This document shows, piece by piece, positions 37,450 to 62,086 of a stretch of DNA of 64,000 nucleotides. Within the stretch, counting starts at the first letter, position 1, and every line of letters starts with the position of its first letter. The notes below the pieces were generated by a model, which saw only the letters and a program-made list of their open reading frames with translations, ran no database searches and was not told the origin of the DNA. Where the stretch lies: the IMG/VR virus record IMGVR_UViG_3300028394_002328, positions 124,001 through 188,000 of that record. The stretch is one strand, 5' to 3'. Made by a program: the position numbers and the translations under genes.

Positions 37450-39276
37450 GTGGCCACGCTAAAGAATACAACTATTAACGATACCGGGTTTGTTACATTA
37501 CCAGTTGGTAATACAGTACAACGACCTGATACTCCAACAGTTGGAATGATGAGATATAACTCAACTAGTGGCTATGCTGAAGTTTATACTAGTGGTGGTT
37601 GGGCTATTTTTGGTTCTTCTCCACCATCTATTAGCACTATATCACCTGGCACTTATAGTGGTGAACAAGGTACATCTTTTACTATTAATGGTGCTAACTT
37701 TAGTAATGATGCCACAGTTAAATTTATTGATGTAAATAATACTGAATACAATGCTGCTGTTGTTACTTTTGTTAATAGCAGCCAATTAACTGCTACAACT
37801 CCCCAAGATTTTACTATAGCACAGGGTCCACTTGATGTTAAAGTATCACAGGCTAGTGGTACAGTTACCAAATTAGATTGTATTGACACGGGCGGAAGTC
37901 CTGGATGGGTTACTACTGCTGGTCAAATAGGTGGTACTATTTATAGAAATGGATCAGTTAGCGTAACTGTTTCAGCCACAGATCCTGACTCAGGTGCTAC
38001 GGTTACTTATTCAGTGTATTCAGGCGCACTTCCATCTGGGTTATCTCTAAACGCAAGCACTGGTGCTATTACAGGGACTGCTCCCAATGTAGGCAGTGAT
38101 ACAACTTACAATTTTACATTGCGAGCAACTGACAACGCAGGTAATACATCTGACCGTGCGTTTAGTATGGTAATATTACAGGGCGCACCTGGAGCACCTA
38201 CTATAGGTACTGCTACTGCAACAAGCGCAACAACTGCAACCGTAGTATTTACGGCACCTGCTAATACAGGTGGAAGTACAATTACTAGTTACACTGCTGT
38301 GTCAAGTCCAAGTAGTATTACCGGTACACTAAGTCAAGCTGGTTCAGGTACTATTACAGTTAGTGGATTAGCTGCTGGTACAAGTTACACCTTTACTGTA
38401 TATGCTACTAATTCGTATGGTAATAGTACTAGTAGTTCGGCAAGTAACAGTATAACAACAAATCAAGTAGCACCATCAACAGTTGAATACTTAGTGCTTG
38501 CAGGCGGTGCTGGTGGTGGAACTAATCACGCAGGTGGTGGTGGTGCAGGTGGTATGTTGACTTCTACATTATCGGTTTCAGCGAGTACTAATTATACAGT
38601 TACAGTTGGTGGTTCTGGAACAGGCGGAATTGGTGGATATGGTAATAGAGGAACTAATGGTTCAACTAGTCAATTTGCTAGTATTAGTACAACAGGTGGT
38701 GGCGGCGGCGGTGGCAGAGGCGGAGGTCCTGGTATTGCTGGCGGATCAGGTGGTGGCGGTGGCGGAGGTAGCGGAGATGAAGGATACGGAGGCACTACTG
38801 ATGCAAGCCAAGGTTATAGAGGTGGCCAAGCAGTTGACTTATATGGAGCTGGCGGCGGCGGCGCCGGCGGTCAAGGTGGTGATAGATCCGGATCTAGCGG
38901 TGGAGCCGGTGGATCGGCAGCGTATAGTAGCATAACAGGCACATCTACCGCTTATGGTGGTGGAGGTGGTGGAGGTGGCTATGGTAGTGGAACAGCTACA
39001 GCCGGTGGATCTGGTATTGGCGGAAATGGTGGTGATGGTAATTCAGGAACTCCTGGTTATTCAGCACCATATGCTAACACAGGATCTGGTGGAGGCGGCG
39101 GCGGTCCTGCTTGGGGAGCCGGCGGAAATGGATCATCCGGAGTTGTAATCATAGCCTATCCAAATACATTTAAAACACTATCTTCAATTGGCGGTGGATT
39201 AAGTTACGATCAACCAAGTAGATCAGGTTATAGGGTATATCGCTTTACCGGTGGCACAGGTTCAATAAGTTGGTAA
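37450..39276 (+). CDS. Modular adhesin 1: LPxG..QRP anchor, IPT/TIG, He_PIG, FN3, glycine-rich tip
   Basis: Domains readable in the translation; ends GYRVYRFTGGTGSISW. Confidence 0.8.
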   Translation: MATLKNTTINDTGFVTLPVGNTVQRPDTPTVGMMRYNSTSGYAEVYTSGGWAIFGSSPPSISTISPGTYSGEQGTSFTINGANFSNDATVKFIDVNNTEYNAAVVTFVNSSQLTATTPQDFTIAQGPLDVKVSQASGTVTKLDCIDTGGSPGWVTTAGQIGGTIYRNGSVSVTVSATDPDSGATVTYSVYSGALPSGLSLNASTGAITGTAPNVGSDTTYNFTLRATDNAGNTSDRAFSMVILQGAPGAPTIGTATATSATTATVVFTAPANTGGSTITSYTAVSSPSSITGTLSQAGSGTITVSGLAAGTSYTFTVYATNSYGNSTSSSASNSITTNQVAPSTVEYLVLAGGAGGGTNHAGGGGAGGMLTSTLSVSASTNYTVTVGGSGTGGIGGYGNRGTNGSTSQFASISTTGGGGGGGRGGGPGIAGGSGGGGGGGSGDEGYGGTTDASQGYRGGQAVDLYGAGGGGAGGQGGDRSGSSGGAGGSAAYSSITGTSTAYGGGGGGGGYGSGTATAGGSGIGGNGGDGNSGTPGYSAPYANTGSGGGGGGPAWGAGGNGSSGVVIIAYPNTFKTLSSIGGGLSYDQPSRSGYRVYRFTGGTGSISW

Positions 39277-39279
39277 TAT

Positions 39280-40332
39280 ATGGCAACCCTTAAAAATTCA
39301 ACCATTAACGATACACAATTCTTTACATTGCCTGCAGGTACTACGGCACAACGGCCAGCTAGCCCTGTACAGGGCATGACACGCTATAATACAACATTAG
39401 GTTATATTGAGTGGTACGATAGTGTAAGTGCAACATGGCGACCTATCTATCAAAGTCCAAGTATTGAAGTAACTTATTTAGTAGTTGGTAGTGGCGGAGG
39501 CGGCGGAGGTGGCTTTAGTACAGATGCCGCAGGTGGAGGTGGAGGTGCCGGCGCATATATAGAAGGCACTGAGTATCTAGTGTCAGGCACCTCCAAAATA
39601 ATTACTGTTGCAGCCGGTGGTGAAGGTGGTGCAGGTTCTGTTGGTGTTAGAGGTGGTGTTGGTAGTAACACAGTGTATGGTAGTGTCACTGCTAATGGTG
39701 GCGCAGGTGGTGGAACATATAGTGGAAACCCTGCTTATAATCAGGGTATGGATGGCACCAGTAATGGCAATGCATCTGGATCTGGTGGTGCAGGTGCGGG
39801 ATCTGCAACAAATCCAGGAGGAGCCGGGGGAGCATACGGAAATGCAGGTGGATCGCACACGGGTACAGGACAAAGTAACAAATCTACATCATGCGGTGGT
39901 GGGGGTGGGGCAGGCGCAGCAGGTGGAAATGGTACTGCAAATAGCACCGGCGGTGCAGGTGGTATCGGAAAATTAAGCGCTATGACAGGTTTGTATTATG
40001 CTGGTGGAGGTGGAGGTGGTTCTACACAGGGATCAACTGCACAAGGTGGTAATGGAGGTGGCGGTAATGCCGGAGCACCCCCTGGAACTGGTGGAGGGGG
40101 TAATAATGGTTCTGCTGGAACGACAAATCGCGGAGGAGGCGGTGGGGGAGCCAGTGCAGGTAGTGTAACTGTTACAGGTGGAAACGGTGGAAGTGGGGTC
40201 GTAATATTAAGAATAGGCGCTAGTTATATTGTGACTATCGGTGTTGGATTATCATATTCACTAGATACTTCAAATCCAGTATATAAAATTTATACGTTTA
40301 CCTCAGGAACAGGCACAATAACATTTAGTTAA
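39280..40332 (+). CDS. Adhesin 2: anchor plus one glycine-rich domain
   Basis: MATLKNSTIND..LPAGTTAQRP; YLVVGSGGGGG..; ends YKIYTFTSGTGTITFS. Confidence 0.8.
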   Translation: MATLKNSTINDTQFFTLPAGTTAQRPASPVQGMTRYNTTLGYIEWYDSVSATWRPIYQSPSIEVTYLVVGSGGGGGGGFSTDAAGGGGGAGAYIEGTEYLVSGTSKIITVAAGGEGGAGSVGVRGGVGSNTVYGSVTANGGAGGGTYSGNPAYNQGMDGTSNGNASGSGGAGAGSATNPGGAGGAYGNAGGSHTGTGQSNKSTSCGGGGGAGAAGGNGTANSTGGAGGIGKLSAMTGLYYAGGGGGGSTQGSTAQGGNGGGGNAGAPPGTGGGGNNGSAGTTNRGGGGGGASAGSVTVTGGNGGSGVVILRIGASYIVTIGVGLSYSLDTSNPVYKIYTFTSGTGTITFS

Positions 40333-40349
40333 TTAAAAAGGAGAAAAAA

Positions 40350-40718
40350 ATGGCACATTATGCTTTTTTAGATGAAAATTATGTAGTAACAGAAGTTATA
40401 GTTGGTAAAGACGAAAGCAACTTTGATTGGGAAAGACACTATGGTGATTTCCGTGGTCAATTGTGTAAGCGTACTAGTTATAACACAATAGGTGGACAAC
40501 ACACATTAGGTGGACAACCTTATAGAAAAAATTATGCAGGCATAGGTTATACTTATGATCCACAGCGTGATGCTTTCATTCCACCTCAACCATATCCAAG
40601 TTGGACATTAAACGAGGATACTTGTAATTGGGATCCATATAAACCATATCCTAGTGATGGTGGTAGATATACTTGGGATGAAGATCAATTAGATTGGATA
40701 GCAGTACCTACTGAATAA
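40350..40718 (+). CDS. Small aromatic-rich 'MAHYAF' protein 1 (unknown function)
   Basis: Strong SD AGGAG; MAHYAFLDEN.VV.EVIVG..KRTSYNT..YRKNYAGIGYTYD..RDAFIPPQPYPSW. Confidence 0.85.
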   Translation: MAHYAFLDENYVVTEVIVGKDESNFDWERHYGDFRGQLCKRTSYNTIGGQHTLGGQPYRKNYAGIGYTYDPQRDAFIPPQPYPSWTLNEDTCNWDPYKPYPSDGGRYTWDEDQLDWIAVPTE

Positions 40719-40725
40719 TATGTAA

Positions 40726-43434
40726 ATGGCCACCCTTAAAAACACTACAGTAAACGATACTGGTTACTTACAGTTACCAGTTGGTACAACTGATCAAAGA
40801 CCAGTTAGCCCCGCCAACGGCTATACTAGATACAATACCGACTTGCGTGTAGTAGAATATTATGATGCTAACTACAGTAGTTGGATGAGTGTAGTAAGTG
40901 GTGCTAGTGGTACTACACTTAGTGTTGATTTTCTTGTGGTAGCCGGGGGTGGAGGTGGCGGGTTTGACGTATCTGGTGCTGGTGGTGCAGGCGGATTGAG
41001 AACCAGTGCAGGAACCAGTGGCGGTGGTGCCTCAGCCGAAAATGTAGTAACAGCTACCGTTGGCACTGCATATACTGTTACTGTAGGCAGCGGAGGTGCC
41101 GGAAACACATCATCAGGTGTTGGCACCAATGGTAGTAATTCTGTTTTTGGTTCTATTACCGCAATTGGTGGGGGTGGCGGTGGCGGTGCTGCTTACGCAG
41201 GTGTTGCTGGAGGCAGTGGCGGTGGCGGTGGCGCCGGGGCTACTTACACTGGCGGTTTGGGCACAGCCAGTCAAGGGTACGTTGGCGGTACCAGTTATCA
41301 AGCAGGCACCAATTACAGTGCTGGTGGCGGTGGTGGGTCGGGTTCTGTCAGCTCTGCTGCGTCAGCAAGTAAAGGTGGCGACGGTGGGGCAGGAACTGCT
41401 TCTACAATTACTGGCAGTGCAGTAACATATGCTGGTGGAGGTGGAGGTGGATTCTTAAGTACCGCCGGTGCTGCTTCTGCCAGCTCTCGTGGCATAGGTG
41501 CTGCTGGTGGTGGTTCAGGTGGGGTTAGTAGTAGTACTACAATAGTATTTTCATCAACCTCTGCTACATCAAATACAGGTAGTGGCGGCGGTGGCAGTGG
41601 TTGGACCAATGGATCAAATGGGTCGGGTGGTTCGGGTGGTTCAGGTATAGTTGTACTCAAATTCCCAGCTGCATTCTATTTGACAGCCGATGCAGGATTG
41701 ACTAGTAGCGTGGTTACTAGTGGTGCTTATAAGATTGCTACATTCACTGCTGGCACGGGCCCAGTTTATTTTAGTAATACTTCGCCACTTGATGTAAGTT
41801 ATTTAGTGGTTGCTGGTGGCGGTGGATCAGGTGGTCCTGGCAATAGATCAGCTTATACTAATTCTTCAGCATGGTCAGGTGGAGGTGGCGCTGGTGGGTT
41901 ACTAACTGGAACTATTAGCACTATACTTTTAGGGGCCAGTTATACAGTTACAGTTGGTGCTGGTGGGTCAGTAGACAATAATGGAACAAATAGCGTGTTT
42001 AATACATACACCGCTATAGGGGGCGGAGCCGGCGGTGATTCATCTACTGGGGGAGATAACGGTAATAGTGGTGGCTCAGGTGGAGGAGGAGGCGGAGACG
42101 TTGCAACCTCAGGCGGATCGGCTACCGCAGGACAAGGTTACGCAGGTGGAGCTGGACAAGACCTTTCGCCAGAATCTGGAGGTGGCGGTGGAGGCGCCGG
42201 GGGTGTTGGCAATCCAGGCACAACAACAGGAGCAGGTGGTGTTGGATATGCAAGTTCTATTACAGGTACTTCTACTTACTACGCAGGTGGAGGCGGTGGT
42301 GGTGCAGGAGTCGGAACACGAACTACCAATACTGGTGGATTAGGTGGAGGTGGAAATGGTACTACTGTTGCATACGGTTCGACTTCAACAGCTACTCCTG
42401 GTACACCAAATACTGGTGGTGGTGGCGGAGCAGGTCCAACAGCAGGTGGATCCGGTGTAGTCATACTAGCATACGCATCTAATTATTATATTAATGTTGG
42501 CTCAGGTCTAACAGCAGACACAAGTTTGTCAAATGGTGTTAAATATACCAAATTCACAGCAGGTACTGGCTCAATTTCATTTACTACTAGTCCCACTTTT
42601 ACAGTAGATTATCTAGTAGTTGCTGGTGGAGGTAGTGGTGCTACATATACACCTAGCAGTGGTTATGCTAGTGGTAATACAGGTAGTGCTAGTGTTTTTA
42701 ACATTATAACCGCATCAGGTGGAGGTTATGGAGGAGCTTGGAACGCTGCTAGTGGCACTGTAGGAGGAGCAGGTGGTTCCGGTGGTGGCGGCGGTCCTAT
42801 AAATGTAGCAAATCAATCAATAGCAGGCGGAGCTGGCACTGCTGGTCAAGGTTATGCAGGTGGTTCAGGAGTATACACTGGTTCAGCTTATGTAAGCGGT
42901 GGAGGTGGTGGTGCTGGTGGTATTGGTGGTAATGGATCAGGAAGCACATGTGGTGCTGGTGGTGTTGGATATGGTAGTGCGATCAATGGCACCCTTACTT
43001 ATTATGCTGGTGGTGGTGGGGGAGGTACGGCAATCGGTTCTGCTGGAGCAGGTGGAAATGGAGGTGGAGGTGCAGGTGGTAGAGGCGCGAATGGTACATC
43101 CGGTACTCCTAACACCGGAGGTGGCGGGGGTGGCGCAGATTCTGGAATAGGTGCTGGTAATGGTGGAGGTGGCGCCGGTGGATTGTTAGCCAATGTCGCT
43201 TCTAACTTGTCTACCGGTGTTTCATATACTGTAACTATTGGGGCAGGTGCAGCATCGGTTGGTACTGGCACAGGTACTAGTGGCGCAGGTGGTTCAGGTA
43301 TCGTCATACTGCGTGTACCAAGTAATTACTCAGCGACCTTCTCAGGTGGATTAACTACTAGTCTAAGCACTTCAGTAACCGGTTATAAAACCTACACAGT
43401 AACAGCCGGCACTGGTACGGTAACCTTTAGTTAA
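40726..43434 (+). CDS. Adhesin 3: anchor plus three tandem glycine-rich domains
   Basis: Three (V/Y)LVVAGGG..GSGIV(V/I)L..FTAGTG units; ends YKTYTVTAGTGTVTFS. Confidence 0.8.
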   Translation: MATLKNTTVNDTGYLQLPVGTTDQRPVSPANGYTRYNTDLRVVEYYDANYSSWMSVVSGASGTTLSVDFLVVAGGGGGGFDVSGAGGAGGLRTSAGTSGGGASAENVVTATVGTAYTVTVGSGGAGNTSSGVGTNGSNSVFGSITAIGGGGGGGAAYAGVAGGSGGGGGAGATYTGGLGTASQGYVGGTSYQAGTNYSAGGGGGSGSVSSAASASKGGDGGAGTASTITGSAVTYAGGGGGGFLSTAGAASASSRGIGAAGGGSGGVSSSTTIVFSSTSATSNTGSGGGGSGWTNGSNGSGGSGGSGIVVLKFPAAFYLTADAGLTSSVVTSGAYKIATFTAGTGPVYFSNTSPLDVSYLVVAGGGGSGGPGNRSAYTNSSAWSGGGGAGGLLTGTISTILLGASYTVTVGAGGSVDNNGTNSVFNTYTAIGGGAGGDSSTGGDNGNSGGSGGGGGGDVATSGGSATAGQGYAGGAGQDLSPESGGGGGGAGGVGNPGTTTGAGGVGYASSITGTSTYYAGGGGGGAGVGTRTTNTGGLGGGGNGTTVAYGSTSTATPGTPNTGGGGGAGPTAGGSGVVILAYASNYYINVGSGLTADTSLSNGVKYTKFTAGTGSISFTTSPTFTVDYLVVAGGGSGATYTPSSGYASGNTGSASVFNIITASGGGYGGAWNAASGTVGGAGGSGGGGGPINVANQSIAGGAGTAGQGYAGGSGVYTGSAYVSGGGGGAGGIGGNGSGSTCGAGGVGYGSAINGTLTYYAGGGGGGTAIGSAGAGGNGGGGAGGRGANGTSGTPNTGGGGGGADSGIGAGNGGGGAGGLLANVASNLSTGVSYTVTIGAGAASVGTGTGTSGAGGSGIVILRVPSNYSATFSGGLTTSLSTSVTGYKTYTVTAGTGTVTFS

Positions 43435-43444
43435 AGAGTAAAAA

Positions 43445-44050
43445 ATGGCACATTATGCTTTCTTAAATGAATATTTGATTGTTACAGAAGTTATCACTGG
43501 ATTAGATGAAAATAACTATGATTGGGAAACTCATTATGGTAATTTTCGTAGACAACTTTGTAAACGCACTAGTTACAATACATACGGTGGTGTACATAAT
43601 CTAGGTGGCACACCATATAGAAAAAACTATGCTGGTATTGGTTTTAGTTATGACCCACAGCGTGATGCGTTTATACCACCAAAACCAAATGATTATTGGT
43701 TGTTGAACGAAGAAACATGCTTATGGGAAGAACCCTCACCAACAAATTGTGAAGGTGTTTACTTTGCTAGGTTAGATGAAGATAATATTGTTCAACAATT
43801 ATTTTATGTTAAAAATTCTGATACTTCACTCGATGGTGTTATAAACGAAAACATAGGATTAGCATTCTGTAGAAGTGTTTTTGGTAGTGATACAAATTGG
43901 AAGCAAACTAGTCACGATCCACATTTTAGATTTCATTTTGGTGATATTGGCTATAGTTATGATGAAAACTATGATGCTTTTATACCACCTCAACCCGATC
44001 CAAATTGGGTATTAGACTATGATACATTCACTTGGTATTCACCTAGATAA
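43445..44050 (+). CDS. 'MAHYAF' protein 2, tandem two-domain version
   Basis: First half closely parallels 40350; second half (YFARLDEDNIV..WKQTS..GYSYDENYDAFIPPQP) is a second copy of the domain. Confidence 0.85.
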   Translation: MAHYAFLNEYLIVTEVITGLDENNYDWETHYGNFRRQLCKRTSYNTYGGVHNLGGTPYRKNYAGIGFSYDPQRDAFIPPKPNDYWLLNEETCLWEEPSPTNCEGVYFARLDEDNIVQQLFYVKNSDTSLDGVINENIGLAFCRSVFGSDTNWKQTSHDPHFRFHFGDIGYSYDENYDAFIPPQPDPNWVLDYDTFTWYSPR

Positions 44051-44055
44051 AGACA

Positions 44056-44061
44056 TAAATA
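44056..44061 (+). promoter_or_regulatory. Late promoter core, 4 nt before ATG
   Basis: CATAAATA-CAGT-ATG(44066), no SD. Confidence 0.65.
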
Positions 44062-44065
44062 CAGT

Positions 44066-46645
44066 ATGTCAGGAAATATCACCCAAATAGAACCGTTTAA
44101 CCTAAACAATGCTGGAAGTTATACTTTCGGCAATGCTACCGTAACCGGTAATACTGATTTAGGGATAGTAGGCAATGTTACTATTACAGGTGGTACTAGT
44201 GGTTATATATTACAAACTGATGGATCAGGTAATTTAAGTTGGGTCAACCCAGTAGATACATCAGGGTACAGTGGCGCTAGCGGCTATTCAGGTGTCAGTG
44301 GCTATAGTGGTATTTCAGGATACACCGGTATAAGTGGTTACACTGGAGTATCAGGGTATACAGGCGTAAGTGGTGTTAGTGGATACACTGGGGTCAGTGG
44401 ATACACTGGGGTCAGTGGATATAGTGGTGCATCAGGTTCTAGTGGATATTACGGACAAGATGGAGCTAGTGGTTATTCAGGTGTAAGCGGATATACTGGA
44501 GTAAGTGGTTACACAGGTACTAGTGGATACACTGGAATTAGTGGCTATACTGGTACTAGTGGTACTTCAGGTTATACTGGTGCAAGTGGATACACTGGAA
44601 TTAGTGGCTATACAGGTGCATCAGGCACAAGTGGATACACCGGAGTCAGTGGTTATTCAGGTGGTACAGGTAGTAATGGGGCTAGTGGTTATTCAGGGGT
44701 ATCAGGATTCTCTGGATTTAACGCTAATGTAACTTATTCAAGTACTCCACCTGTTAGTCCTCATATAGGTGATTTGTGGGTTAACTCTGATACAGCAGTT
44801 TTGACAATGTACTTCAATGATGGGGTATCAAACAATTGGGCAGAATTAGAAGCAGCACAATCATTTAGTACATCAGGTAGCAGTGGATATTCAGGTTATA
44901 GTGGACTAGGTATAAGTGGTTATAGCGGTTACTCAGGTGGTACTGGTAGTAATGGAGTTAGTGGCTATTCAGGTATAAGTGGATATAGCGGCGGTACTGG
45001 TAGTAATGGTGCTAGTGGTTACTCAGGAATAAGTGGTTATTCAGGTGGCACTGGTAGTAATGGTGCTAGTGGTTATTCAGGAACTAGTGGAGCTACTGGA
45101 CCAAGTTCTATTACAGCAATCAACAATCAACAAAATACAGGTACTGGTGCATTAGGTTTACCAGTTGGAACTACGGCAGAAAGACCCGCTACTGCGTATA
45201 ATGGATATACTAGAATCAATACTAGTACAACCTTTATGGAAATTTACTATAATGGAAATTGGATTAGTGCAGTATCATTGATAACTGCGCCGAACGCACC
45301 AACAATTGGTACTGCTACAGTAGTGAGTTCAACTAGTGCTACTGTCACATACACTGCTCCAGCATACGATGGTGGAGCAACAATTACTAGTTACACGGCT
45401 GTTAGTAGCCCGGGAAATATTACAGGAACATTAAGTCAAGCAGGGTCAGGTACTATTACTGTTAATGGATTGACTACTGGTACTGCTTACACATTTACTG
45501 TATATGCTACTAATAGTGTCGGAAATAGCGTTGCAAGTAGTGCAAGCAACAGTATTACAACTTGGTCAGTACCTGGTGCACCTACTATCGGTACTGCTAC
45601 CGCCACTGGGACAACAACGGCAACAGTTACATTTACTGCACCTGCTAGTAATGGCGGTACAGCGATTACTCAGTATATTGCTACATCAAGTCCAGGTAGT
45701 GTCACTGGAACATTAAGTCAAGCAGGGTCAGGCACTATTAGTATTAGTGGACTAACTCAAGGTACAAGTTATACATTTACAGTTAAAGCGGTTAATGCTG
45801 TTGGTCAAAGTGCTGCAAGTAGTGCAAGTAATAGTATAACTACACAATCTGCAACACCTACATCAGTTGAATATCTAGTGGTTGCTGGTGGAGGTGGTGG
45901 AGGTGGTGCATCTGGTGGTAGAGGTGGCGGTGGAGGTGCAGGCGGAATGTTAACCAGCACTCTATCTGTTTCAGCAAGTACTGCATACACTGTAACCGTT
46001 GGCGGTGGCGGACCTGGTAGTAATTTAACTGCAGGACGAGGATCTAATGGAACAGCTAGTCAATTTGCTTCGATTAGTACAGTAGGAGGAGGAGGTGGCG
46101 CCGGTGACGACGGTGGAGGTATTGGTTATGGATCTGCTGGTGGATCCGGTGGTGGTGGCCATTATGATGGTGCTGGCGGTGCTGGCACAGCCGGACAAGG
46201 TAATAATGGTGGCTCTGGTATAACCAGTCCAAACTTTGGATCAGGCGGTGGCGGTGGCGCCGGAGCTGTTGGACAAAGTGGACAAACTTATAAAGGCGGC
46301 GATGGTGGTATAGGAAATCTATCTAGTATAACTGGTTCATCTACATACTATGCAGGCGGTGGTGGTGGCCAACTTAATGGCGGTACTGCTGGATCTGGCG
46401 GTGCAGGTGGTGGTGGTGCAGGTAACGGCCAAAATAATGGCTTTAGTAATACTGGAGGCGGTGGAGGTGGAAATGGCTCTGGTGGTACAGCAGGTGCCGG
46501 TGGTTCTGGAGTAGTTATCATTGCTTATCCTGACTCATACAATGCGCCTGCATCAATTTCCGGCGGATTAACTTACGATCAACCAAGCAGGTCAGGTTAT
46601 AGAGTGTATCGTTTCACACAAGGTACTGGTACTATTACTTGGTAA
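44066..46645 (+). CDS. Adhesin 4: Gly-X-Ser repeats, anchor motif, 2x FN3, glycine-rich tip
   Basis: Gly-X-Ser blocks at about 44264-44720 and 44870-45100; LPVGTTAERP; two APTIGTAT FN3 units; ends GYRVYRFTQGTGTITW. Confidence 0.8.
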   Translation: MSGNITQIEPFNLNNAGSYTFGNATVTGNTDLGIVGNVTITGGTSGYILQTDGSGNLSWVNPVDTSGYSGASGYSGVSGYSGISGYTGISGYTGVSGYTGVSGVSGYTGVSGYTGVSGYSGASGSSGYYGQDGASGYSGVSGYTGVSGYTGTSGYTGISGYTGTSGTSGYTGASGYTGISGYTGASGTSGYTGVSGYSGGTGSNGASGYSGVSGFSGFNANVTYSSTPPVSPHIGDLWVNSDTAVLTMYFNDGVSNNWAELEAAQSFSTSGSSGYSGYSGLGISGYSGYSGGTGSNGVSGYSGISGYSGGTGSNGASGYSGISGYSGGTGSNGASGYSGTSGATGPSSITAINNQQNTGTGALGLPVGTTAERPATAYNGYTRINTSTTFMEIYYNGNWISAVSLITAPNAPTIGTATVVSSTSATVTYTAPAYDGGATITSYTAVSSPGNITGTLSQAGSGTITVNGLTTGTAYTFTVYATNSVGNSVASSASNSITTWSVPGAPTIGTATATGTTTATVTFTAPASNGGTAITQYIATSSPGSVTGTLSQAGSGTISISGLTQGTSYTFTVKAVNAVGQSAASSASNSITTQSATPTSVEYLVVAGGGGGGGASGGRGGGGGAGGMLTSTLSVSASTAYTVTVGGGGPGSNLTAGRGSNGTASQFASISTVGGGGGAGDDGGGIGYGSAGGSGGGGHYDGAGGAGTAGQGNNGGSGITSPNFGSGGGGGAGAVGQSGQTYKGGDGGIGNLSSITGSSTYYAGGGGGQLNGGTAGSGGAGGGGAGNGQNNGFSNTGGGGGGNGSGGTAGAGGSGVVIIAYPDSYNAPASISGGLTYDQPSRSGYRVYRFTQGTGTITW

Positions 46646-46649
46646 ACAA

Positions 46650-46655
46650 TAAATA
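46650..46655 (+). promoter_or_regulatory. Late promoter core, 5 nt before ATG
   Basis: CAATAAATATAATCATG; near-identical copy at 48873. Confidence 0.7.
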
Positions 46656-46660
46656 TAATC

Positions 46661-48871
46661 ATGGCAATACTTCAAATAGACCCTAGTTCAATAAATTCTA
46701 GTTCATCATATTCTTTTGCGAATGTGACGGCTAATACATTCACTGCCACTGAAAATTTACAAATTCCTAATGGTAATACGGCACAACGACCTAATAGTCC
46801 AGCATATGGATTAATGAGATATAATACAGAAACTGGTCTTGCTGAAATATATACTAGCAGTGGGTGGGGAGTATTTGGATCACAACCACCTACAATAAGC
46901 ACAGTATCACCAGGTACTTTTAATGGAGAAATAGGTACATCTTTTACTATTAATGGAGCTAATTTTACTAATGACGCTACTGTTAAATTTGTTGATGTAA
47001 ATAACACAGAATACAGTGCAGCGATTGTTACTTTTGTTAACTCTAGTCAATTACTTGCTACTACACCGCAAGACTTTACAGTAGCACAGGGACCACTTGA
47101 TGTTAAAGTAGTTCAACTAAGTGGAACGGTTACTAAATTAAATTGTATTGATACTGGTAGTAGTCCTGGTTGGTATACTCCCGCAGGACAAATTGGTGGT
47201 ACAATTTATAGAAACGGAATAGTTAGTATAACGGTTGTTGCTACTGACCCTGACCCAAGTGCTACTATCACTTATAGTGTGCTTTCAGGCGCACTTCCAA
47301 GCGGATTATCATTGGATTCTAGTACCGGTGTTATCTCTGGTACTGCTCCCGATATTGGTAGTGATACTACATACAACTTCACACTAAGAGCCACAGACAA
47401 CGCAGGTAATACATCTGACCGCGCATTTAGTATAATAATATTACAGGGAGCACCTGGTGCACCTACTGTAGGTACTGCAACAAGATCGGCAAGTCAATCA
47501 GTTCAAGTGACATTTACTGCACCTGCAAATGTTGGTGGTAGTGCAATTACCAGTTACACAGTTACAAGTAGCCCAGGCAGCCTTACAGGGACAGGTGCAA
47601 CAAGTCCTATAACTGTAACTGGTTTGACAAATGGCACAGCATACACATTTACTGTAACCGCTACAAACAGTTATGGCACTAGTGTGGCTAGTAGCGCAAG
47701 TAACTCCGCTACACCGTATACAGTACCTGGTGCACCTACTATTGGTAGTGCTACTTCTACTGGTACTACCACTGCTACAGTTGCTTTCACTGCACCTGCA
47801 AGCAACGGTGGAAGCACTATAACAAGTTACACAGCGGTAAGTAGTCCTGGTAGTATAACCGGTACACTAAGTCAAGCAGGTTCGGGTACTATTACAGTTA
47901 GTGGATTAACCCCAGGTACAAGTTATACATTTACTGTATATGCAACTAATGCAGGTGGTAATAGTTCTAATAGTAGTGCAAGTAATAGCATAACAACAAC
48001 TCAAGTAGCCCCAACATCTGTTGAATATCTTGTTGTTGCTGGTGGAGGTGGAGGTGGGTCAAGATTTGGTGGCGGTGGTGGAGCTGGTGGTATGTTGACT
48101 TCTACTTTATCAGTTTCTGCGAGCACTGGTTATACAGTTACAGTCGGTGGTGGAGGTTCAGGTGGAGCAGGCAGTGGTGGACCTAATACTAATGGAGCAA
48201 CTAACGGCGGTCCAGGTAATAATTCAGTATTTGCATCTATAACCACAATTGGTGGTGGATACGGTGCAGCAGGTGATACTGGAAACGGTGGATCTGGTGG
48301 ATCTGGAGGTGGTGGAGCTGGACGATTTAACAGCAGTGGTGGTAGCGGTACAGGTGGGCAAGGAAATGCCGGTGCTTCTACACTTGGACAAGATGGCGGA
48401 TCAGCATCATTTAATGGTGGTGGTGGTGGTGGAGCAGGAGCAGCAGGACCTTATAATTCATTTGGTGTTGGTGGAAATGGTTCAGCTAGTTCTATTACAG
48501 GATCATCAGTAACATACGCAGGTGGTGGCGGTGGCGGCGGAACAGGAGATGGCGGCGGTCCAGGTGGCGTGAGAAACGGTGGTGCCGGAGGGTCTGGCGG
48601 TGGCGGTGCGGGTGGACCATATTCTGGTGGATCCGCTACAGGTGGTACTAATAACTTGGGTGGAGGAGGCGGAGGTGGAGCCTACAACGCTACATTTAGT
48701 GGTGATAACCAACCCGGTGCTTCTGGTGGATCTGGTGTAGTTATCATTGCTTATCCAAACACATTTTTACCATTGTCATCAATTAGCGGTGGACTCAGTT
48801 ACGATCAACCTACTAGATCAGGTTATAGAGTATATCGCTTTACTGGCGGTACAGGCACTATCTCTTGGTAA
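46661..48871 (+). CDS. Adhesin 5: anchor, IPT, He_PIG, 2x FN3, glycine-rich tip
   Basis: Same architecture as 48887; ends GYRVYRFTGGTGTISW. Confidence 0.8.
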   Translation: MAILQIDPSSINSSSSYSFANVTANTFTATENLQIPNGNTAQRPNSPAYGLMRYNTETGLAEIYTSSGWGVFGSQPPTISTVSPGTFNGEIGTSFTINGANFTNDATVKFVDVNNTEYSAAIVTFVNSSQLLATTPQDFTVAQGPLDVKVVQLSGTVTKLNCIDTGSSPGWYTPAGQIGGTIYRNGIVSITVVATDPDPSATITYSVLSGALPSGLSLDSSTGVISGTAPDIGSDTTYNFTLRATDNAGNTSDRAFSIIILQGAPGAPTVGTATRSASQSVQVTFTAPANVGGSAITSYTVTSSPGSLTGTGATSPITVTGLTNGTAYTFTVTATNSYGTSVASSASNSATPYTVPGAPTIGSATSTGTTTATVAFTAPASNGGSTITSYTAVSSPGSITGTLSQAGSGTITVSGLTPGTSYTFTVYATNAGGNSSNSSASNSITTTQVAPTSVEYLVVAGGGGGGSRFGGGGGAGGMLTSTLSVSASTGYTVTVGGGGSGGAGSGGPNTNGATNGGPGNNSVFASITTIGGGYGAAGDTGNGGSGGSGGGGAGRFNSSGGSGTGGQGNAGASTLGQDGGSASFNGGGGGGAGAAGPYNSFGVGGNGSASSITGSSVTYAGGGGGGGTGDGGGPGGVRNGGAGGSGGGGAGGPYSGGSATGGTNNLGGGGGGGAYNATFSGDNQPGASGGSGVVIIAYPNTFLPLSSISGGLSYDQPTRSGYRVYRFTGGTGTISW

Positions 48872-48875
48872 TCAA

Positions 48876-48881
48876 TAAATA
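48876..48881 (+). promoter_or_regulatory. Late promoter core, 5 nt before ATG
   Basis: CAATAAATATAATTATG. Confidence 0.7.
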
Positions 48882-48886
48882 TAATT

Positions 48887-51031
48887 ATGTCATTACTTAG
48901 AATTGAACCAGCCGCGGTAAATGCCAATTCATCATTCTCTTTTGCAGGAGTAAATGCTACAGGCAATTTACAGTTACCTACTGGAAATACTGCTCAACGG
49001 CCAGGAAGTCCAATAGCCGGGACAATTAGATATAATTCACAAACAGGTTTCGCGGAAATATATACTAGCAGTGGATGGGCAACATTTGGTGCTCCTCCTC
49101 CAACTATCAGTACCGTATCACCTGGTACTTATAATGGAGAAACAGGTACTGAATTTACTGTAAATGGGGCTAATTTTACTAATGACGCTGTAGTTAAATT
49201 TGTTGATGTAAACAATACAGAATATAGCGCTACTGTAGTTACATTTGTAAATTCAAGTCAATTAATAGCCACTACACCTCAAGATTTTACCGTAGCACAA
49301 GGACCACTTGATGTTAAAGTAACACAATTAAGTGGAACAGTTACTAAACTAGCCTGTATAGATACTGGTGGTAGTCCCAGTTGGGTTACTACTGCTGGTC
49401 AAATAGGCGGTACAATTTATAGAAATGGCTCAGTTAGTGTAACTGTCTCAGCTACCGATCCTGATGCAAGTGCTACGATTACTTACAGTGTGCTTTCAGG
49501 TGCATTGCCAAGTGGATTAAGTTTGAATTCAAGTACAGGTGCTATTACTGGTACTGCACCTGATGTAGGTAGTGATACTACTTACAATTTTACATTGCGA
49601 GCAACTGACAATGCAGGTAATACATCTGACCGTGCGTTTAGTATGGTAATATTACAAGGTGCTCCAGGTGCACCTGTTATCGGTACAGCAACAAGATCAG
49701 CCAGCCAATCAGTTCAAGTTACATTTACCGCACCTGCAAATGTTGGCGGTAGTAGTATTACTAGTTACACTGCTACCAGTAGTCCAGGTAGTATTACAGG
49801 CACCGGTGCAAGCAGTCCAGTTACTGTAACTGGGTTGACAAATGGAACTGCATATACATTTACTGTTACTGCTACTAATAGTTATGGTACTGGTACTGCC
49901 AGTGGTGCTAGTAATTCTGCTACTCCATATGGTGTACCTGGTGCACCTACTATTGGTACTGCTACTTCTACTGGTACTACAACTGCTACTGTATCATTTA
50001 CCGCACCTGCAAGCAACGGCGGTAGTACAATAACCAGTTACACTGCGGTTAGTAGCCCTGGCAATGTCACTGGCACATTAAGTCAAGCAGGATCAGGTAC
50101 TATTACAGTAAGTGGATTAAGCGCAGGTACAAGTTACACATTTACAGTATATGCTACAAATGCCGCAGGTAATAGCGCTAATAGTTCAGCAAGTAATCAG
50201 ATAACAACAACTCAAGTAGCTCCAACTTCAGTTGAATACTTAGTATTAGCTGGTGGAGGTGGCGGCAGAGATTGTGGTACAGCAATTGGATCATCTGGTG
50301 GCGGTGGTGCTGGTGGATATTATAATTCAACTATAGCAGTATCGGGAAGTACTAGTTACACTGTAACAGTTGGTGGTGGAGGTACAAGAAATAATAATGG
50401 ATCAAACAGTGAATTTGCTAGCGTACTCGCATATGGTGGCGGTACTGGAGGAACAGGTACTCACGGTGCTGGCGAAAACGGAACTTCAGGTGGATCAGGT
50501 GGTGGCGGTGGTTGGGGTGATAATTCATACGGATATGGTGGATCCAGTCTAGGTGGCGGTAATGCAGGTGGAGTGGGCGGTACACGAAGTCAACCCGGTG
50601 GTGATCCGCCGTATGGTGCAGGTGGAGGAGGAGGCGCTGGTAGTGCTGGTGGTAACTACAGTGGTGGTGCAGGTGGATCAGGCGCTTCTAGTTCTATTAC
50701 AGGATCTTCGGTTACTTACGCAGGTGGCGGCGGCGGTGGTAATGAGTTAGGAACACCTGGTAGTGGTGGATCAGGAATAGGTGGTGCAGGTGGCACAAAT
50801 GGTGGTGGATACAATGCACCCACCGCTAACACAGGTGGCGGTGGAGGAGGAGCAGGTGGATATAATGGTGGCGCCGGAGGATCCGGTTCTTCTGGGGTAG
50901 TTATCATAGCATATCCAAATACATTTTTACCATTGTCATCAATATCTGGCGGACTCAGTTATGATCAACCCAGCAGAAGTGGTTATAGAGTATATCGCTT
51001 TACTGGCGGTACAGGTCCTATTAGCTGGTAA
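48887..51031 (+). CDS. Adhesin 6: anchor, IPT, He_PIG, 2x FN3, glycine-rich tip
   Basis: Tandem paralogue of 46661; ends GYRVYRFTGGTGPISW. Confidence 0.8.
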   Translation: MSLLRIEPAAVNANSSFSFAGVNATGNLQLPTGNTAQRPGSPIAGTIRYNSQTGFAEIYTSSGWATFGAPPPTISTVSPGTYNGETGTEFTVNGANFTNDAVVKFVDVNNTEYSATVVTFVNSSQLIATTPQDFTVAQGPLDVKVTQLSGTVTKLACIDTGGSPSWVTTAGQIGGTIYRNGSVSVTVSATDPDASATITYSVLSGALPSGLSLNSSTGAITGTAPDVGSDTTYNFTLRATDNAGNTSDRAFSMVILQGAPGAPVIGTATRSASQSVQVTFTAPANVGGSSITSYTATSSPGSITGTGASSPVTVTGLTNGTAYTFTVTATNSYGTGTASGASNSATPYGVPGAPTIGTATSTGTTTATVSFTAPASNGGSTITSYTAVSSPGNVTGTLSQAGSGTITVSGLSAGTSYTFTVYATNAAGNSANSSASNQITTTQVAPTSVEYLVLAGGGGGRDCGTAIGSSGGGGAGGYYNSTIAVSGSTSYTVTVGGGGTRNNNGSNSEFASVLAYGGGTGGTGTHGAGENGTSGGSGGGGGWGDNSYGYGGSSLGGGNAGGVGGTRSQPGGDPPYGAGGGGGAGSAGGNYSGGAGGSGASSSITGSSVTYAGGGGGGNELGTPGSGGSGIGGAGGTNGGGYNAPTANTGGGGGGAGGYNGGAGGSGSSGVVIIAYPNTFLPLSSISGGLSYDQPSRSGYRVYRFTGGTGPISW

Positions 51032-51040
51032 GGACTATTA

Positions 51041-52738
51041 ATGACAACGCAAATAACAACAGACAATATACAAACTAGTTCGGTTTATAGCCTCCAAGGA
51101 CCTAGAATCACTACTATTCAAATAACCAATAGTAGTTATGTTGTATTAGATGATACTGCTGTTAGCACCTCAGGTGGATATATTAAAATTACTGGTACTG
51201 GATTTACTAGTGGTAGTCAAGTATTAGTAAACAGTGTTGCAGCAACTAGTACTACTTTTGTTAGTGCTGTAGAATTAAGGGCACAACTACCGGCTACAGC
51301 CGCTGGTACTTATATATTATATGTAGCGGATACAAATGGTGGATTGGCTAGTAAAGTAAATGGTATTACATTTAGTGGTACTCCTACTTGGGTTACAGGT
51401 AGTACATTAACTAGTGGTATTTCTGCTGTTGCTTACAGTACACAACTTTCGGCTACTAGTGATAGTGCTATAACATACGCATTACAAGCAGGTAGTACAT
51501 TACCTACAGGATTGTCATTATCTAGCAGTGGATTACTTAGTGGTACTGTGACTATTGGATCGGATACTACATATAGTTTTACTATTACTGCTACCGACGT
51601 TGAATTACAAGATAGTCCTAGAACATTTAGTTTAACAATTATTGCGGCTACGGTGCCTGGAGCACCTACAATAGGTAGTGCTACAGCAACTGGTAGTAGT
51701 ACTGCTACAGTTACATTCACCGCACCAGTGTCAAATGGAGGTAGTACAATTACTTCTTACACCGCAGTTAGCAGTCCTGGTAGTATTACTGGTACACTAA
51801 GTCAGGCTGGTTCAGGTACTATTACTGTAAGTGGTTTAACACCGAGTACAAGTTACACCTTTACTGTATATGCTACAAATTCTATAGGCAATAGTGCAAA
51901 TAGCGCAGCGAGTAATAGTATTACTACTGCTCAGGTAGCACCAACTTCAGTTGAATATCTAGTTGTTGCCGGTGGCGGTGCGGGCGGAGCGGGTGCTAGT
52001 GGAGGTGGTGGAGCGGGCGGATTATCTTATAATTCATCGTTTGCAGTTAGCGCATCAACTGGATATACAATTACAATCGGTGGTGGTGGAGCTAGTGTAT
52101 CATATCCATCACTTAGTAATCCTGGTTCTAGCTCAGTATTTGCTAGTGTAACCTCACTGGGCGGCGGTTATGGTGGAGCTGGGCTTTCAGACACAACAAG
52201 AAATGGTGGAAGCGGAGGATCGGGTGGCGGTGGAGGTGCACCAGATGGATCCGGAGGTGCAGGCACCGCCGGACAAGGCAATAATGGTGGAGCAAATCAT
52301 CCAGGTGGATCATATGCAGGTGGTGGTGGCGGCGGCGCTGGCGGTGCTGGTGCAAACGGTACACAAGATACTGGAGGACCAGGCGGCGTAGGATTGTCAT
52401 ATAGTATAATAGGCGCGGCAACTTATTATGCAGGCGGTGGTGGCGGTGCCGGCAATTCCAACAGCGGTGCAGGCGGCAGTGGCGGAGGCGGAGCGGGCGG
52501 AGGCGGAGATCCTAGTAGTGGTATTGCAGGAACTCCCAACACTGGTGGTGGTGGCGGAGGTTCAAGAGGAGGAGGACCAGTTAGTGGGCCAGGCGGCTCC
52601 GGAGTAGTCATTATAGCCTATCCAAATACATATTTACCATTATCATCAATTAGTGGTGGACTCTCTTACGACCAACCTACAAGATCAGGTTACAGAGTAT
52701 ATCGCTTTACTGGTGGTACAGGTACTATCTCTTGGTAA
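51041..52738 (+). CDS. Adhesin 7: IPT, He_PIG, FN3, glycine-rich tip
   Basis: GGYIKITGTGFTSGSQVLV (IPT), LPTGLSLSSSGLLSGT (He_PIG), FN3, Gly-rich; ends GYRVYRFTGGTGTISW. Confidence 0.8.
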   Translation: MTTQITTDNIQTSSVYSLQGPRITTIQITNSSYVVLDDTAVSTSGGYIKITGTGFTSGSQVLVNSVAATSTTFVSAVELRAQLPATAAGTYILYVADTNGGLASKVNGITFSGTPTWVTGSTLTSGISAVAYSTQLSATSDSAITYALQAGSTLPTGLSLSSSGLLSGTVTIGSDTTYSFTITATDVELQDSPRTFSLTIIAATVPGAPTIGSATATGSSTATVTFTAPVSNGGSTITSYTAVSSPGSITGTLSQAGSGTITVSGLTPSTSYTFTVYATNSIGNSANSAASNSITTAQVAPTSVEYLVVAGGGAGGAGASGGGGAGGLSYNSSFAVSASTGYTITIGGGGASVSYPSLSNPGSSSVFASVTSLGGGYGGAGLSDTTRNGGSGGSGGGGGAPDGSGGAGTAGQGNNGGANHPGGSYAGGGGGGAGGAGANGTQDTGGPGGVGLSYSIIGAATYYAGGGGGAGNSNSGAGGSGGGGAGGGGDPSSGIAGTPNTGGGGGGSRGGGPVSGPGGSGVVIIAYPNTYLPLSSISGGLSYDQPTRSGYRVYRFTGGTGTISW

Positions 52739-62069: not shown

Positions 62070-62086
62070 TTTAAAAGGAAACTAAT

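What the first reader, a model, noticed from the sequence alone, without database searches (positions are those of the whole stretch)
37450..52738. Array of seven paralogous adhesins carrying nine glycine-rich tip domains with variable loops
Seen: each domain keeps a fixed scaffold (VEYLV(V/L)AGGG..GGGAGG..YTVTVG.GG..S.F..I...GGG.G..GGSGGGG..QG..GG..GGGGAG..Y(A/G)GGGGG..NTGGGGGG..GGSGVVI) while the inter-glycine loops all differ; stalks vary in IPT, He_PIG, FN3 (11 FN3 copies from 37450 to 59570) and Gly-X-Ser content. Established: T-even gp38 adhesins use conserved glycine-rich motifs flanking hypervariable receptor-binding loops on a polyglycine-II scaffold, normally one gene per phage. Inference: a parallel, antibody-like receptor repertoire displayed at different stalk lengths, diversified by duplication and recombination rather than by a DGR or invertase.
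Basis: partly seen in the sequence, partly recalled or inferred. Interest (0 to 1): 0.72.

Follow-up and report, generated by a model that had tools for sequence, protein, structure and literature searches.

The report
Paralogous glycine-rich phage fibre tips
An uncultured 335-kb freshwater phage carries a large family of tail-fibre genes, seven of them in this window, that each end in a known polyglycine binding domain with different loops; this is an unusually large set of probable host-binding tips, but it is a fixed and conserved set, not an antibody-like variable one.

Summary
Seven same-strand ORFs (37450-52738) carry nine copies of Pfam PF21722 (Gly_rich_2), and there are 11 FN3 copies as stated. 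The window is part of a 335,035-bp IMG/VR jumbo myophage from freshwater. That genome holds a second cluster just past the window, giving 12 genes and 15 domains.

An AlphaFold model of one tip (pLDDT 96) matches the distal TNF-like plus polyglycine domain of the cyanophage Pam3 tail fibre gp24 (Z 13.7) and a Bxb1 tail-tip chain (Z 12.2). It matches ALK/LTK only weakly, and S16 gp38 does not appear. The closest known relative is therefore the Pam3-type polyglycine-rich domain, not gp38.

Paralogues keep the glycine scaffold (88% identity) and differ in the loops (33%, with indels). Orthologous tips in related phages, however, are 82-91% identical without gaps (dN/dS 0.13-0.24), while their stalks are only 38-61% identical. 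The tips are conserved cassettes that are exchanged between phages, not hypervariable sites. No reverse transcriptase or invertase was found.

A small gene family (phrog_7759) abuts these genes and weakly resembles the Pam3 fibre chaperone.

Verdict: a new variant of a known kind. Receptor binding and co-display on the virion remain untested.

The parts
37450..39276 (+). Fibre gene A (608 aa). Layout: N-terminal LPxGTTxQRP module, TIG, He_PIG, one fn3, then a polyglycine-rich domain (PGD) at nt 38473-39273.
   Evidence: Pfam hits; domain borders; N-module motif.
39280..40332 (+). Fibre gene B (350 aa). The shortest form: the N-terminal module is joined directly to a PGD at nt 39460-40329.
   Evidence: The ESM Atlas structure neighbours of residues 1-60 are the N-termini of other phage tail proteins (a lead only).
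40350..40718 (+). Small ORF S1a (122 aa, phrog_7759). Candidate fibre-assembly chaperone.
   Evidence: phrog_7759 at E 1.8e-35. The family abuts PGD genes in 28 of 40 loci, against 3 of 34 loci without a PGD. The AF2 model has pLDDT 95. Its best PDB match is the N-domain of Pam3 chaperone gp25, at Z 4.8.
40726..43434 (+). Fibre gene C (902 aa). The N-terminal module is followed by three tandem PGDs at nt 40915-41784, 41785-42594 and 42595-43431. The third PGD has one strand-pair element moved to nt 43162-43257.
43445..44050 (+). Small ORF S1b (201 aa). A tandem double of the S1 domain.
   Evidence: phrog_7759 at E 1.8e-51 with two stretches; sequence.
44066..46645 (+). Fibre gene D (859 aa). 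Layout: GGxxGxxLxTDGxGNLSW-type N-terminus, two collagen-like blocks, an internal LPxGTTxERP module, two fn3, then a PGD at nt 45857-46642.
46661..48871 (+). Fibre gene E (736 aa). Layout: N-module, TIG, He_PIG, two fn3, then a PGD at nt 48011-48868.
   Evidence: An orthologous tip in the related phage G005 is 82% identical.
48887..51031 (+). Fibre gene F (714 aa). Same layout as E, with the PGD at nt 50222-51028.
   Evidence: Orthologous tips are 91% (G002) and 83% (G005) identical without gaps, on stalks about 215 aa shorter.
51041..52738 (+). Fibre gene G (565 aa). Layout: TIG-like domain, He_PIG, one fn3, then a PGD at nt 51941-52735. This is the domain that was modelled.
   Evidence: The AF2 model has pLDDT 96.2 and pTM 0.93. 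It matches Pam3 gp24 at Z 13.7 and Bxb1 9d93_Qa at Z 12.2.
34541..37438 (+). Upstream tail fibre (965 aa) with a C-terminal Peptidase_S74 intramolecular chaperone. It marks the start of the fibre module.
   Evidence: PHROG long-tail-fibre families; PF13884.
52765..57792 (+). Giant collagen-like fibre protein (1675 aa) directly after the array. It has no PGD.
   Evidence: Collagen repeats at E 2e-97; tail-fibre PHROGs.
57762..59570 (+). Protein with three fn3 domains and a Laminin_G_3 end (602 aa). The same stalk parts carry a different distal domain.
   Evidence: FN3 copies.
61263..64000 (+). Context genes: DnaJ (61263-62066) and a ClpB/ClpA-like AAA+ chaperone (62087 onward, running off the window). 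They lie between the two fibre clusters of the genome.

Best explanation
The region is the first of two clusters of tail-fibre (side-fibre) genes of an uncultured 335-kb freshwater jumbo myophage.

Build of each protein. Each is assembled from exchangeable parts. A short N-terminal anchor module comes first. Then comes a stalk of Ig-like domains (TIG, He_PIG, FN3) or collagen-like triple helix, of varying length. The protein ends in one to three polyglycine-rich domains (PGD, Pfam PF21722).

The PGD. It is a TNF-like beta-sandwich from which hairpins of polyglycine-II strands project. The glycine runs form the rigid lattice, and the turns between them form the variable surface.

Inferred function. 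By analogy with Pam3 gp24 and, more distantly, S16 gp38, that surface is inferred to contact the host envelope. On this reading the phage carries 15 different, genetically fixed binding surfaces on 12 proteins, for several receptors or several hosts.

Origin of the set. It arose by old duplications. It is maintained by purifying selection and is reshuffled between related phages as whole tip cassettes. It is not diversified in place.

Companion gene. The abutting small S1 proteins probably help these fibres fold, as gp25 does for Pam3 gp24.

Shown: domain identity, predicted fold, copy number, conservation pattern, and absence of reverse transcriptase and invertase. Inferred: presence in the virion, receptor binding, distinct specificities, the chaperone role.
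For: - Family: PF21722 above cut-off in all seven ORFs and phrog_2295.
- Fold: the AF2 model of tip G has pLDDT 96.2. Among 48,161 PDB chains, only Pam3 fibre 7ypx_A (Z 13.7, 166 aligned residues, rmsd 2.5) and Bxb1 tail tip 9d93_Qa (Z 12.2, 35% identity) stand out. The next rows drop to Z 5 (springtail antifreeze protein, ALK GRD).
- Literature: PMC9608196 describes gp24 as a TNF-like plus glycine-rich distal domain proposed to bind the receptor, with chaperone gp25.
- Context: sheath, tube, head closure, a Peptidase_S74 fibre and collagen-like fibres lie on the same strand, and gaps inside the array are 3-26 nt.
- Whole genome: 12 genes and 15 domains.
- Related contigs hold 8-11 matches each. 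Other phage contigs hold 1-3.
- The tree gives one-to-one orthologues of the paralogues.
- Orthologous tips are 82-91% identical without gaps, against 38-61% for the stalks.
- Tip dN/dS is 0.13-0.24. Tip dS is 0.45-0.66, against 0.9-1.4 in the adjacent FN3.
- No RT or resolvase.
- S1 adjacency has Fisher p 7e-8, and the best structural match of S1 is Pam3 gp25.
Against: - No experiment or proteome places any of these proteins in a virion, and no receptor is known, even for Pam3 gp24.
- PGDs occur in tandem (gene C), and in metagenomic giants with up to 19 matched stretches. Many copies therefore cannot be terminal, which weakens a simple 'tip' picture.
- I could not map loop variability onto the model, because no coordinates are returned. 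That the variable loops form one distal face rests on the Pam3 paper, not on a test here.
- The S1-gp25 match is weak (Z 4.8). Foldseek and sequence profiles found nothing, and the complex prediction gave no verdict.
- The low tip dS may partly reflect codon constraint in the glycine runs, although the non-glycine codons show the same trend.
Confidence: 0.65

Rival explanations
1. The proteins are virion appendages, but the PGDs are low-specificity 'brush' domains. On this reading they give weak, generic adhesion to lipids, polysaccharide, slime or particles. The many copies would then add avidity and reach, not distinct specificities.
For: - Papers on mycobacteriophage PGDs propose contact with lipid through exposed hydrophobic residues and call them brush domains (PMC13243795; bioRxiv 10.64898/2026.07.24.740622; PMC13252515).
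- Ig-like stalks are typical of weakly adhesive phage decorations (general knowledge).
- Tandem PGDs occur in gene C, and giants with many copies exist.
- The domain is very widespread in aquatic viruses, including algal viruses, which fits a generic role.
Against: - Each paralogue keeps its own loop set under purifying selection across phages, with one-to-one orthologues. That is more than a generic sticky surface would need.
- The tips are poor in large hydrophobic residues: F 1.6%, L 2.9%, W 0.4%. They are rich in S, T, N and Y.
Confidence: 0.25
2. The loops are diversified in place, by a diversity-generating retroelement, an invertible-segment switch or another hypermutation process, so that individual phages differ in their tips.
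For: The conserved scaffold with variable loops looks superficially like a DGR target. Glycine codon runs could in principle slip.
Against: - No RVT_1 and no Resolvase match in the 88-kb contig or the 335-kb genome.
- No inverted repeats, and no repeat pair above 84% identity, in 34000-60000.
- There are 0 mismatches over 27 kb between two assemblies.
- Exact tip stretches occur in contigs of other samples from 2017, and a near-exact one in a sample from 2022.
- Orthologues have no indels and low dN/dS.
Confidence: 0.03
3. The proteins are not virion parts. They could be made in the infected cell for another purpose, such as surface modification or exclusion of other phages. Alternatively, the similarity could be a low-complexity artefact.
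For: There is no direct evidence of virion location. All database relatives are named 'hypothetical' or 'glycine-rich domain-containing'.
Against: - The genes lie inside the tail and fibre gene block on the same strand.
- The fold matches two solved virion proteins.
- The N-terminal module is shared with other phage tail proteins (a lead only).
- Invariant non-glycine anchor residues and a pLDDT-96 model argue against an artefact.
Confidence: 0.04

Closest known systems
Distal TNF-like plus glycine-rich domain of cyanophage Pam3 tail fibre gp24 (PDB 7YPX, 7YFW), with its chaperone gp25
   Same: - Best structural match: Z 13.7, 166 aligned residues, 26% identity.
- The only sequence-level PDB hit: E 4e-4.
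- Both have glycine-rich motifs with less conserved turns.
- A small gene lies next to the fibre gene, and its N-half is nearest to the N-domain of gp25.
   Different: - Pam3 has one fibre gene with an alpha-helical N-terminal domain. Here there are 12 genes with Ig-like or collagen-like stalks and a different N-terminal module.
- The domain here is larger. I count roughly 14-16 glycine segments by eye, against 12 in gp24.
- It has an extra C-terminal stretch of about 35 residues that the match does not cover (model residues 234-265).
- S1 lacks the C-terminal helical domain of gp25.
Polyglycine-rich 'brush' domains of mycobacteriophage tail proteins (Bxb1 tail tip, PDB 9D93; gp33 and gp29 according to PMC13243192)
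   Same: Second-best structural match, Z 12.2-12.4 with 35-36% identity over about 164 residues. These are also parts of a virion adhesion device.
   Different: They belong to siphophages of Gram-positive-like hosts and are proposed to bind lipid through hydrophobic loop residues. Here the loops are mostly S, T, N, Y and A. I could not read the primary Bxb1 paper.
T-even/S16 gp38 adhesin (PDB 6F45, Pfam PF05268)
   Different: - No PF05268 hit.
- 6F45 is absent from both VIA lists.
- gp38 is a small separate protein that caps the gp37 trimer. Here the domain is fused to its own stalk.
ALK/LTK extracellular TNF-like plus glycine-rich supradomain (PDB 7LS0, 7NX0; Pfam PF12810)
   Same: A beta-sandwich from which polyglycine-II strands project. 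It is a partial structural match, Z 4.4-5.3 over 103-111 residues. The Pam3 paper notes the same likeness.
   Different: No PF12810 hit. It is an animal receptor that binds a cytokine. The Z-score is in the range the tool itself calls common.
Multi-RBP sets of large myophages, such as branched tailspike or depolymerase sets of jumbo Klebsiella phages and CBA120-like phages (from my own knowledge, not tested here)
   Same: Many receptor-binding proteins are encoded side by side in one large phage and presumably displayed together to widen host or receptor range.
   Different: Those sets use beta-helix depolymerase tailspikes of unrelated sequence. Here all members share one small non-enzymatic binding domain. 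No depolymerase-type Pfam domain was found in the array.

Membership tests
Pfam PF21722 Gly_rich_2 / phage polyglycine-rich domain (PGD) | Match to the family HMM above the curated cut-off (24.3 bits) | tested here: met
   All seven ORFs score 39-120 bits. There are 15 domains in the whole genome.
Pfam PF21722 Gly_rich_2 / phage polyglycine-rich domain (PGD) | Fold: beta-sandwich core carrying a bundle of extended glycine-rich strands, as in Pam3 gp24 | tested here: met
   The AF2 model has pLDDT 96.2. It matches 7ypx_A at Z 13.7 and 9d93 at Z 12.2-12.4, far above the next rows. This is a predicted model, not a solved structure.
Pfam PF21722 Gly_rich_2 / phage polyglycine-rich domain (PGD) | Located on a virion fibre and contacts the host | not testable with these tools
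   Only gene context and analogy are available.
T-even gp38 adhesin (PF05268) | Sequence membership in the GP38 family | tested here: not met
   No PF05268 hit at E<=0.01 in the seven proteins, and none in the 335-kb genome. The control genomes were silent in that search, so one search is the stronger test.
T-even gp38 adhesin (PF05268) | A small separate protein that caps the tip of another fibre protein | tested here: not met
   The domain is the C-terminal part of proteins of 350-902 aa that have their own stalks.
T-even gp38 adhesin (PF05268) | Conserved glycine-rich motifs flanking variable segments | tested here: met
   Scaffold columns are 88% identical and loops 33%, with indels only in the loops.
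T-even gp38 adhesin (PF05268) | Fold similarity to S16 gp38 (6F45) | tested here: inconclusive
   6F45 is not among the 50 rows shown in either VIA list or the 50 Foldseek rows shown. The tool states that a missing match does not show that the folds differ.
ALK/LTK glycine-rich domain (PF12810) | HMM match and fold match | tested here: inconclusive
   There is no HMM hit. The structural Z of 4.4-5.3 over about 110 residues shows a related arrangement but is not decisive.
Diversity-generating retroelement target | Reverse transcriptase nearby, and a template/variable repeat pair | tested here: not met
   No RVT_1 in the contig or the genome. No repeat pair above 84% identity in 34000-60000.
Invertible tail-fibre switch (Gin/Cin/Hin type) | Serine invertase and inverted repeats flanking the fibre ends | tested here: not met
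   No Resolvase match and 0 inverted repeats. All the genes are on one strand.
Tail-fibre assembly chaperone (Pam3 gp25 / Mu Tfa type), for the small ORFs 40350-40718 and 43445-44050 | Gene directly next to the fibre gene it serves | tested here: met
   S1 is present in 28 of 40 loci with a PGD against 3 of 34 without (p 7e-8). It is nearly always within 36 nt on the same strand, and mostly downstream.
Tail-fibre assembly chaperone (Pam3 gp25 / Mu Tfa type), for the small ORFs 40350-40718 and 43445-44050 | Fold or sequence likeness to a known chaperone, and binding to the fibre | tested here: inconclusive
   - The best of 48,161 chains is gp25 residues 3-56, but only at Z 4.8. Mu Tfa is at Z 2.5.
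- Foldseek and the profile search found nothing.
- The complex prediction gave no verdict.

The most novel reading that the evidence does not exclude
The polyglycine-rich domain may serve this clade of freshwater jumbo phages as a general binding scaffold held as a fixed, inherited repertoire. One particle would carry 15 distinct tips on fibres of different reach. Each tip would be tuned to its own ligand. The tips would move between co-occurring phages as cassettes cut at the conserved VEYLV border, and a dedicated, so far unnamed chaperone family (phrog_7759) would fold them. If so, host range in these phages would be set by which cassettes they hold, and the cassettes could be read directly from metagenomes.
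Probability: 0.3. Interest if true: 0.7.

Novelty: new variant of a known kind. Interest (0 to 1): 0.5.

Why it matters
Polyglycine-rich domains have only recently been recognised as parts of phage adhesion devices, in S16, Pam3 and the mycobacteriophages. Their ligands are mostly unknown.

The profile built here finds about 30,000 representative proteins (clusters at 50% identity). They include proteins of pelagiphages, cyanophages and algal viruses. Almost all of them are named 'hypothetical'.

This phage clade offers natural material for studying the domain. It has 15 variants of one scaffold in one genome, with orthologues in sister phages that show which positions are free to vary and which are held fixed.

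The finding that tips are better conserved than stalks, and look more recently shared, bears on how host range evolves in large uncultured phages.

The tight link with a small uncharacterised gene family gives a testable candidate for the folding helper. Such a helper would be needed to produce these domains in the laboratory.

Tried and rejected
- Megablast of the locus and tblastn of gene G against the 50,697 GenBank phage records gave no match. BLAST's low-complexity filter masks the glycine runs, so this says little.
- Complex prediction of gene B with S1a scored 0.00 and gave no verdict. It is not evidence either way.
- Read laying could only use Logan contigs, which are short, mix in paralogues and related phages, and drop rare variants.
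  - It did show exact tip stretches in two other 2017 samples, and a stretch with 5 differences in 983 nt in a 2022 sample.
  - It could not measure within-population loop diversity.
- Foldseek against the PDB aligned the tip model poorly (TM 0.33-0.43), although it ranked the right entries first. VIA-align was needed.
- For S1, Foldseek, a profile search of PDB sequences, Pfam and the ESM Atlas gave no named relative.
- The promoter and terminator scan found nothing above the shuffled expectation. There are no tRNA genes in the window.
- The primary Bxb1 structure paper is not held in the library.
- Considered and rejected: a DGR, an invertase switch and a composition artefact (see the rival explanations).
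- Considered but not tested: whether this phage belongs to the 'moraphage' lineage of PMC12619734.
- Mapping variability onto the 3-D model was not possible, because no coordinates are returned.


Full report
WHAT IS IN THE SEQUENCE

Between 37450 and 52738 there are seven long ORFs on the + strand, separated by gaps of only 3-26 nt. Two small ORFs are interspersed at 40350-40718 and 43445-44050.

All seven long ORFs match Pfam PF21722 (Gly_rich_2) above its curated cut-off, and also phrog_2295, a family of unknown function. The 902-aa ORF carries three copies, so the window holds nine domains. Their borders are listed.

TIG/IPT, He_PIG, fn3 and collagen-like repeats are present in different numbers. 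Eleven FN3 copies lie between 38181 and 58984.

The nine domains are 44-66% identical pairwise. Besides the glycine runs they share invariant non-glycine anchors, so the likeness is homology and not composition. Glycine makes up 35.8% of their residues.

WHERE IT COMES FROM

The window is part of an 88-kb IMG/VR virus record. The same sequence lies in a 335,035-bp record that CheckV rates 95% complete. The two records show no mismatch over window positions 37001-64000.

The sequence is found in freshwater metagenomes from 2017 to 2025.

The window also encodes a tail sheath, tail tube, head-closure protein, a lysozyme-like protein, a fibre with a Peptidase_S74 chaperone end, and giant collagen-like proteins. 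The sheath is 43-44% identical to those of the jumbo myophages Atu_ph07, Phosso and PA5oct. This is therefore a large contractile-tailed phage, and the array lies in its fibre gene block.

THE ARRAY IS LARGER THAN SEEN

In the 335-kb genome a second cluster begins about 5 kb past the window end. It has five more genes and six more domains, giving 12 genes and 15 domains in total.

Between the two clusters lie a collagen-like fibre gene, an FN3 plus Laminin_G_3 protein, a holin-like protein, a carbonic-anhydrase-like protein, DnaJ and a ClpB-like ATPase.

Related contigs from other samples hold 8-11 matches each. Other phage contigs that share stalk domains hold 1-3, and one complete 67-kb genome holds one. 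Atu_ph07 and PA5oct have none, and Phosso has two. The expansion is thus a trait of this clade.

WHAT THE DOMAIN IS

An AlphaFold2 model of the last tip, built on an alignment of 62 sequences, has mean pLDDT 96.2 and pTM 0.93.

An exhaustive structural comparison with 48,161 PDB chains gave two clear matches.
- The cyanophage Pam3 fibre (7ypx_A): Z 13.7, 166 residues aligned, rmsd 2.5.
- A chain of the Bxb1 tail tip (9d93): Z 12.2, 35% identity.

The next rows fall to Z 5: a springtail polyproline-II antifreeze protein and the ALK glycine-rich domain.

The Pam3 fibre is also the only clear sequence-level PDB hit, and a weak one.

The Pam3 paper (PMC9608196) describes this part of gp24 as a TNF-like beta-sandwich that extends into a glycine-rich domain. 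It describes a conserved stem and a less conserved distal tip that is proposed to bind the receptor. It also notes likeness to S16 gp38 and to ALK. Later papers call such modules polyglycine-rich or brush domains (PMC13243192, PMC13243795, PMC13252515, bioRxiv 10.64898/2026.07.24.740622).

S16 gp38 itself did not appear in my structure lists, and PF05268 gave no hit.

The family is very large. The nine-domain profile finds 30,502 representative proteins at E<=0.001, some with up to 19 matched stretches. Predicted viral structures with TM up to 0.92 include proteins of uncultured phages, a pelagiphage, cyanophages and prasinoviruses.

HOW THE COPIES DIFFER AND HOW THEY EVOLVE

Among the paralogues, glycine-scaffold columns are 88% identical, strands 50% and loops 33%. 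All length variation lies in the loops.

A tree of 39 domains from this phage and three related contigs shows well-supported one-to-one orthologues for most paralogues.

For three of them (D, E, F) the orthologous tips are 82-91% identical. Two have no gaps, and E has six gap positions. Their stalks are only 38-61% identical and differ by more than 100 residues in length.

Tip dN/dS is 0.13-0.24, or 0.21-0.33 for non-glycine codons. Tip dS is about half that of the adjacent FN3 domain.

From this I infer three things.
- The paralogues are old.
- Each tip, loops included, is held by purifying selection.
- Whole tips have been exchanged between phage lineages more recently than their stalks.

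This supports 'duplication and recombination' but not ongoing antibody-like variation.

In line with that, there is no reverse transcriptase and no serine invertase in the genome. The region has no inverted repeats and no near-identical repeat pair. Contigs from other samples carry exact or near-exact tip stretches. Contigs hide rare variants, so this last point is only partial.

COMPANION GENES

The small ORFs belong to phrog_7759. In 74 related loci this family is present in 28 of 40 loci with a tip domain and in 3 of 34 without (Fisher p 7e-8). It almost always lies within 36 nt of a tip gene on the same strand, usually just downstream.

Its AlphaFold model (pLDDT 95.3) has as best match, among 48,161 chains, the N-terminal domain of Pam3 gp25. 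[quoted passage not shown] The Mu fibre chaperone is fourth. The scores are low, however (Z 4.8 and 2.5), and other searches found nothing.

I therefore propose, with modest confidence, that this is a fibre-assembly helper.

The shared N-terminal 60 residues of five of the fibres resemble, in predicted structure, the N-termini of phage tail proteins that carry quite different distal domains (a lead only). That fits an anchor module.

MECHANISM PROPOSED

Fibres of different length are anchored through a common N-terminal module. Each presents one to three rigid polyglycine lattices whose turns form a specific surface.

The 15 surfaces are fixed in the genome. They are probably expressed together, given the tight same-strand packing with no terminator-like sites in the gaps. 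They give the particle several specificities or high avidity.

Shown: family, predicted fold, number, conservation pattern, and absence of diversifying enzymes. Inferred: virion location, binding, distinct ligands, the chaperone role.

The main rival is that the domains are generic low-specificity brushes. The paralogue-specific conservation argues against it but does not exclude it.

VERDICT

This is a new variant of a known kind: a known phage binding domain expanded into a 12-gene family, with conserved, exchangeable tips and a candidate dedicated chaperone.

Noticed in passing
window 40350-40718 and 43445-44050; also L084:16033-16389: A small virus-only gene family (phrog_7759) almost always abuts Gly_rich_2 fibre genes in related loci. 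The N-half of its model is nearest to the Pam3 fibre chaperone gp25. The 201-aa copy is a tandem double.
   Followed up: yes
window 42595-43431 (third domain of the 902-aa ORF); moved element at 43162-43257: The element of about 32 residues (GGGGAGGLL...SYTVTIGAG) lies at domain positions 21-53 in seven of the other eight copies (copy B gave no clear alignment). In this copy it sits just before the last strand. This is a segment transposition inside the domain, and the family HMM matches the copy in two pieces.
   Followed up: partly
window 60283-61227: A protein with an alpha-type carbonic anhydrase domain (PF00194, E 6e-17) is encoded among the phage structural and lysis genes. This is unusual for a phage.
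   Followed up: no
window 61263-62066 and 62087-64000 (continues to about 64351 in L084): DnaJ and a ClpB/ClpA-like double AAA+ chaperone are encoded between the two fibre clusters. They may help fold the glycine-rich and collagen-like fibres, or serve another role. DnaJ is reported as typical of the freshwater 'moraphages' (PMC12619734). That link was not tested.
   Followed up: partly
window 9516-17378: A 2620-aa ORF with 16 collagen-repeat stretches and raised G+C (0.43-0.46, against about 0.36 nearby). It shares the N-terminal GGxxGxxLxTDGxGNLSW motif with the fibres at 34541, 44066 and 52765.
   Followed up: partly
L084:11771-12142 (about 4.8 kb past the window end), with orthologues in G002, G003 and G005: A second small conserved ORF family (123 aa, begins MANPNI...) lies directly upstream of the first gene of the second fibre cluster. 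It has no family match.
   Followed up: no
window 37450-37620, 39280-39450, 40726-40900, 46720-46890, 48980-49100; internal in 44066-46645 near aa 370: A module of about 55 residues (LPxGTTxQRP...RYN...W) heads five of the fibres and sits inside a sixth, after its collagen-like part. Its predicted-structure neighbours are the N-termini of phage tail proteins with other distal domains (PTL_trimer, Collar, Fibrinogen_C).
   Followed up: partly
last ~37 codons of five tips (genes A, D, E, F, G): 39163-39273, 46532-46642, 48758-48868, 50918-51028, 52625-52735: The last 37 or so residues (…YPNTF.PLSSISGGLSYDQP.RSGYRVYRFTGGTG.ISW) are 82% identical among five paralogues and up to 95% identical in proteins of other phages. 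That is far more conserved than the rest of the tip. The match to Pam3 gp24 does not cover this stretch.
   Followed up: partly
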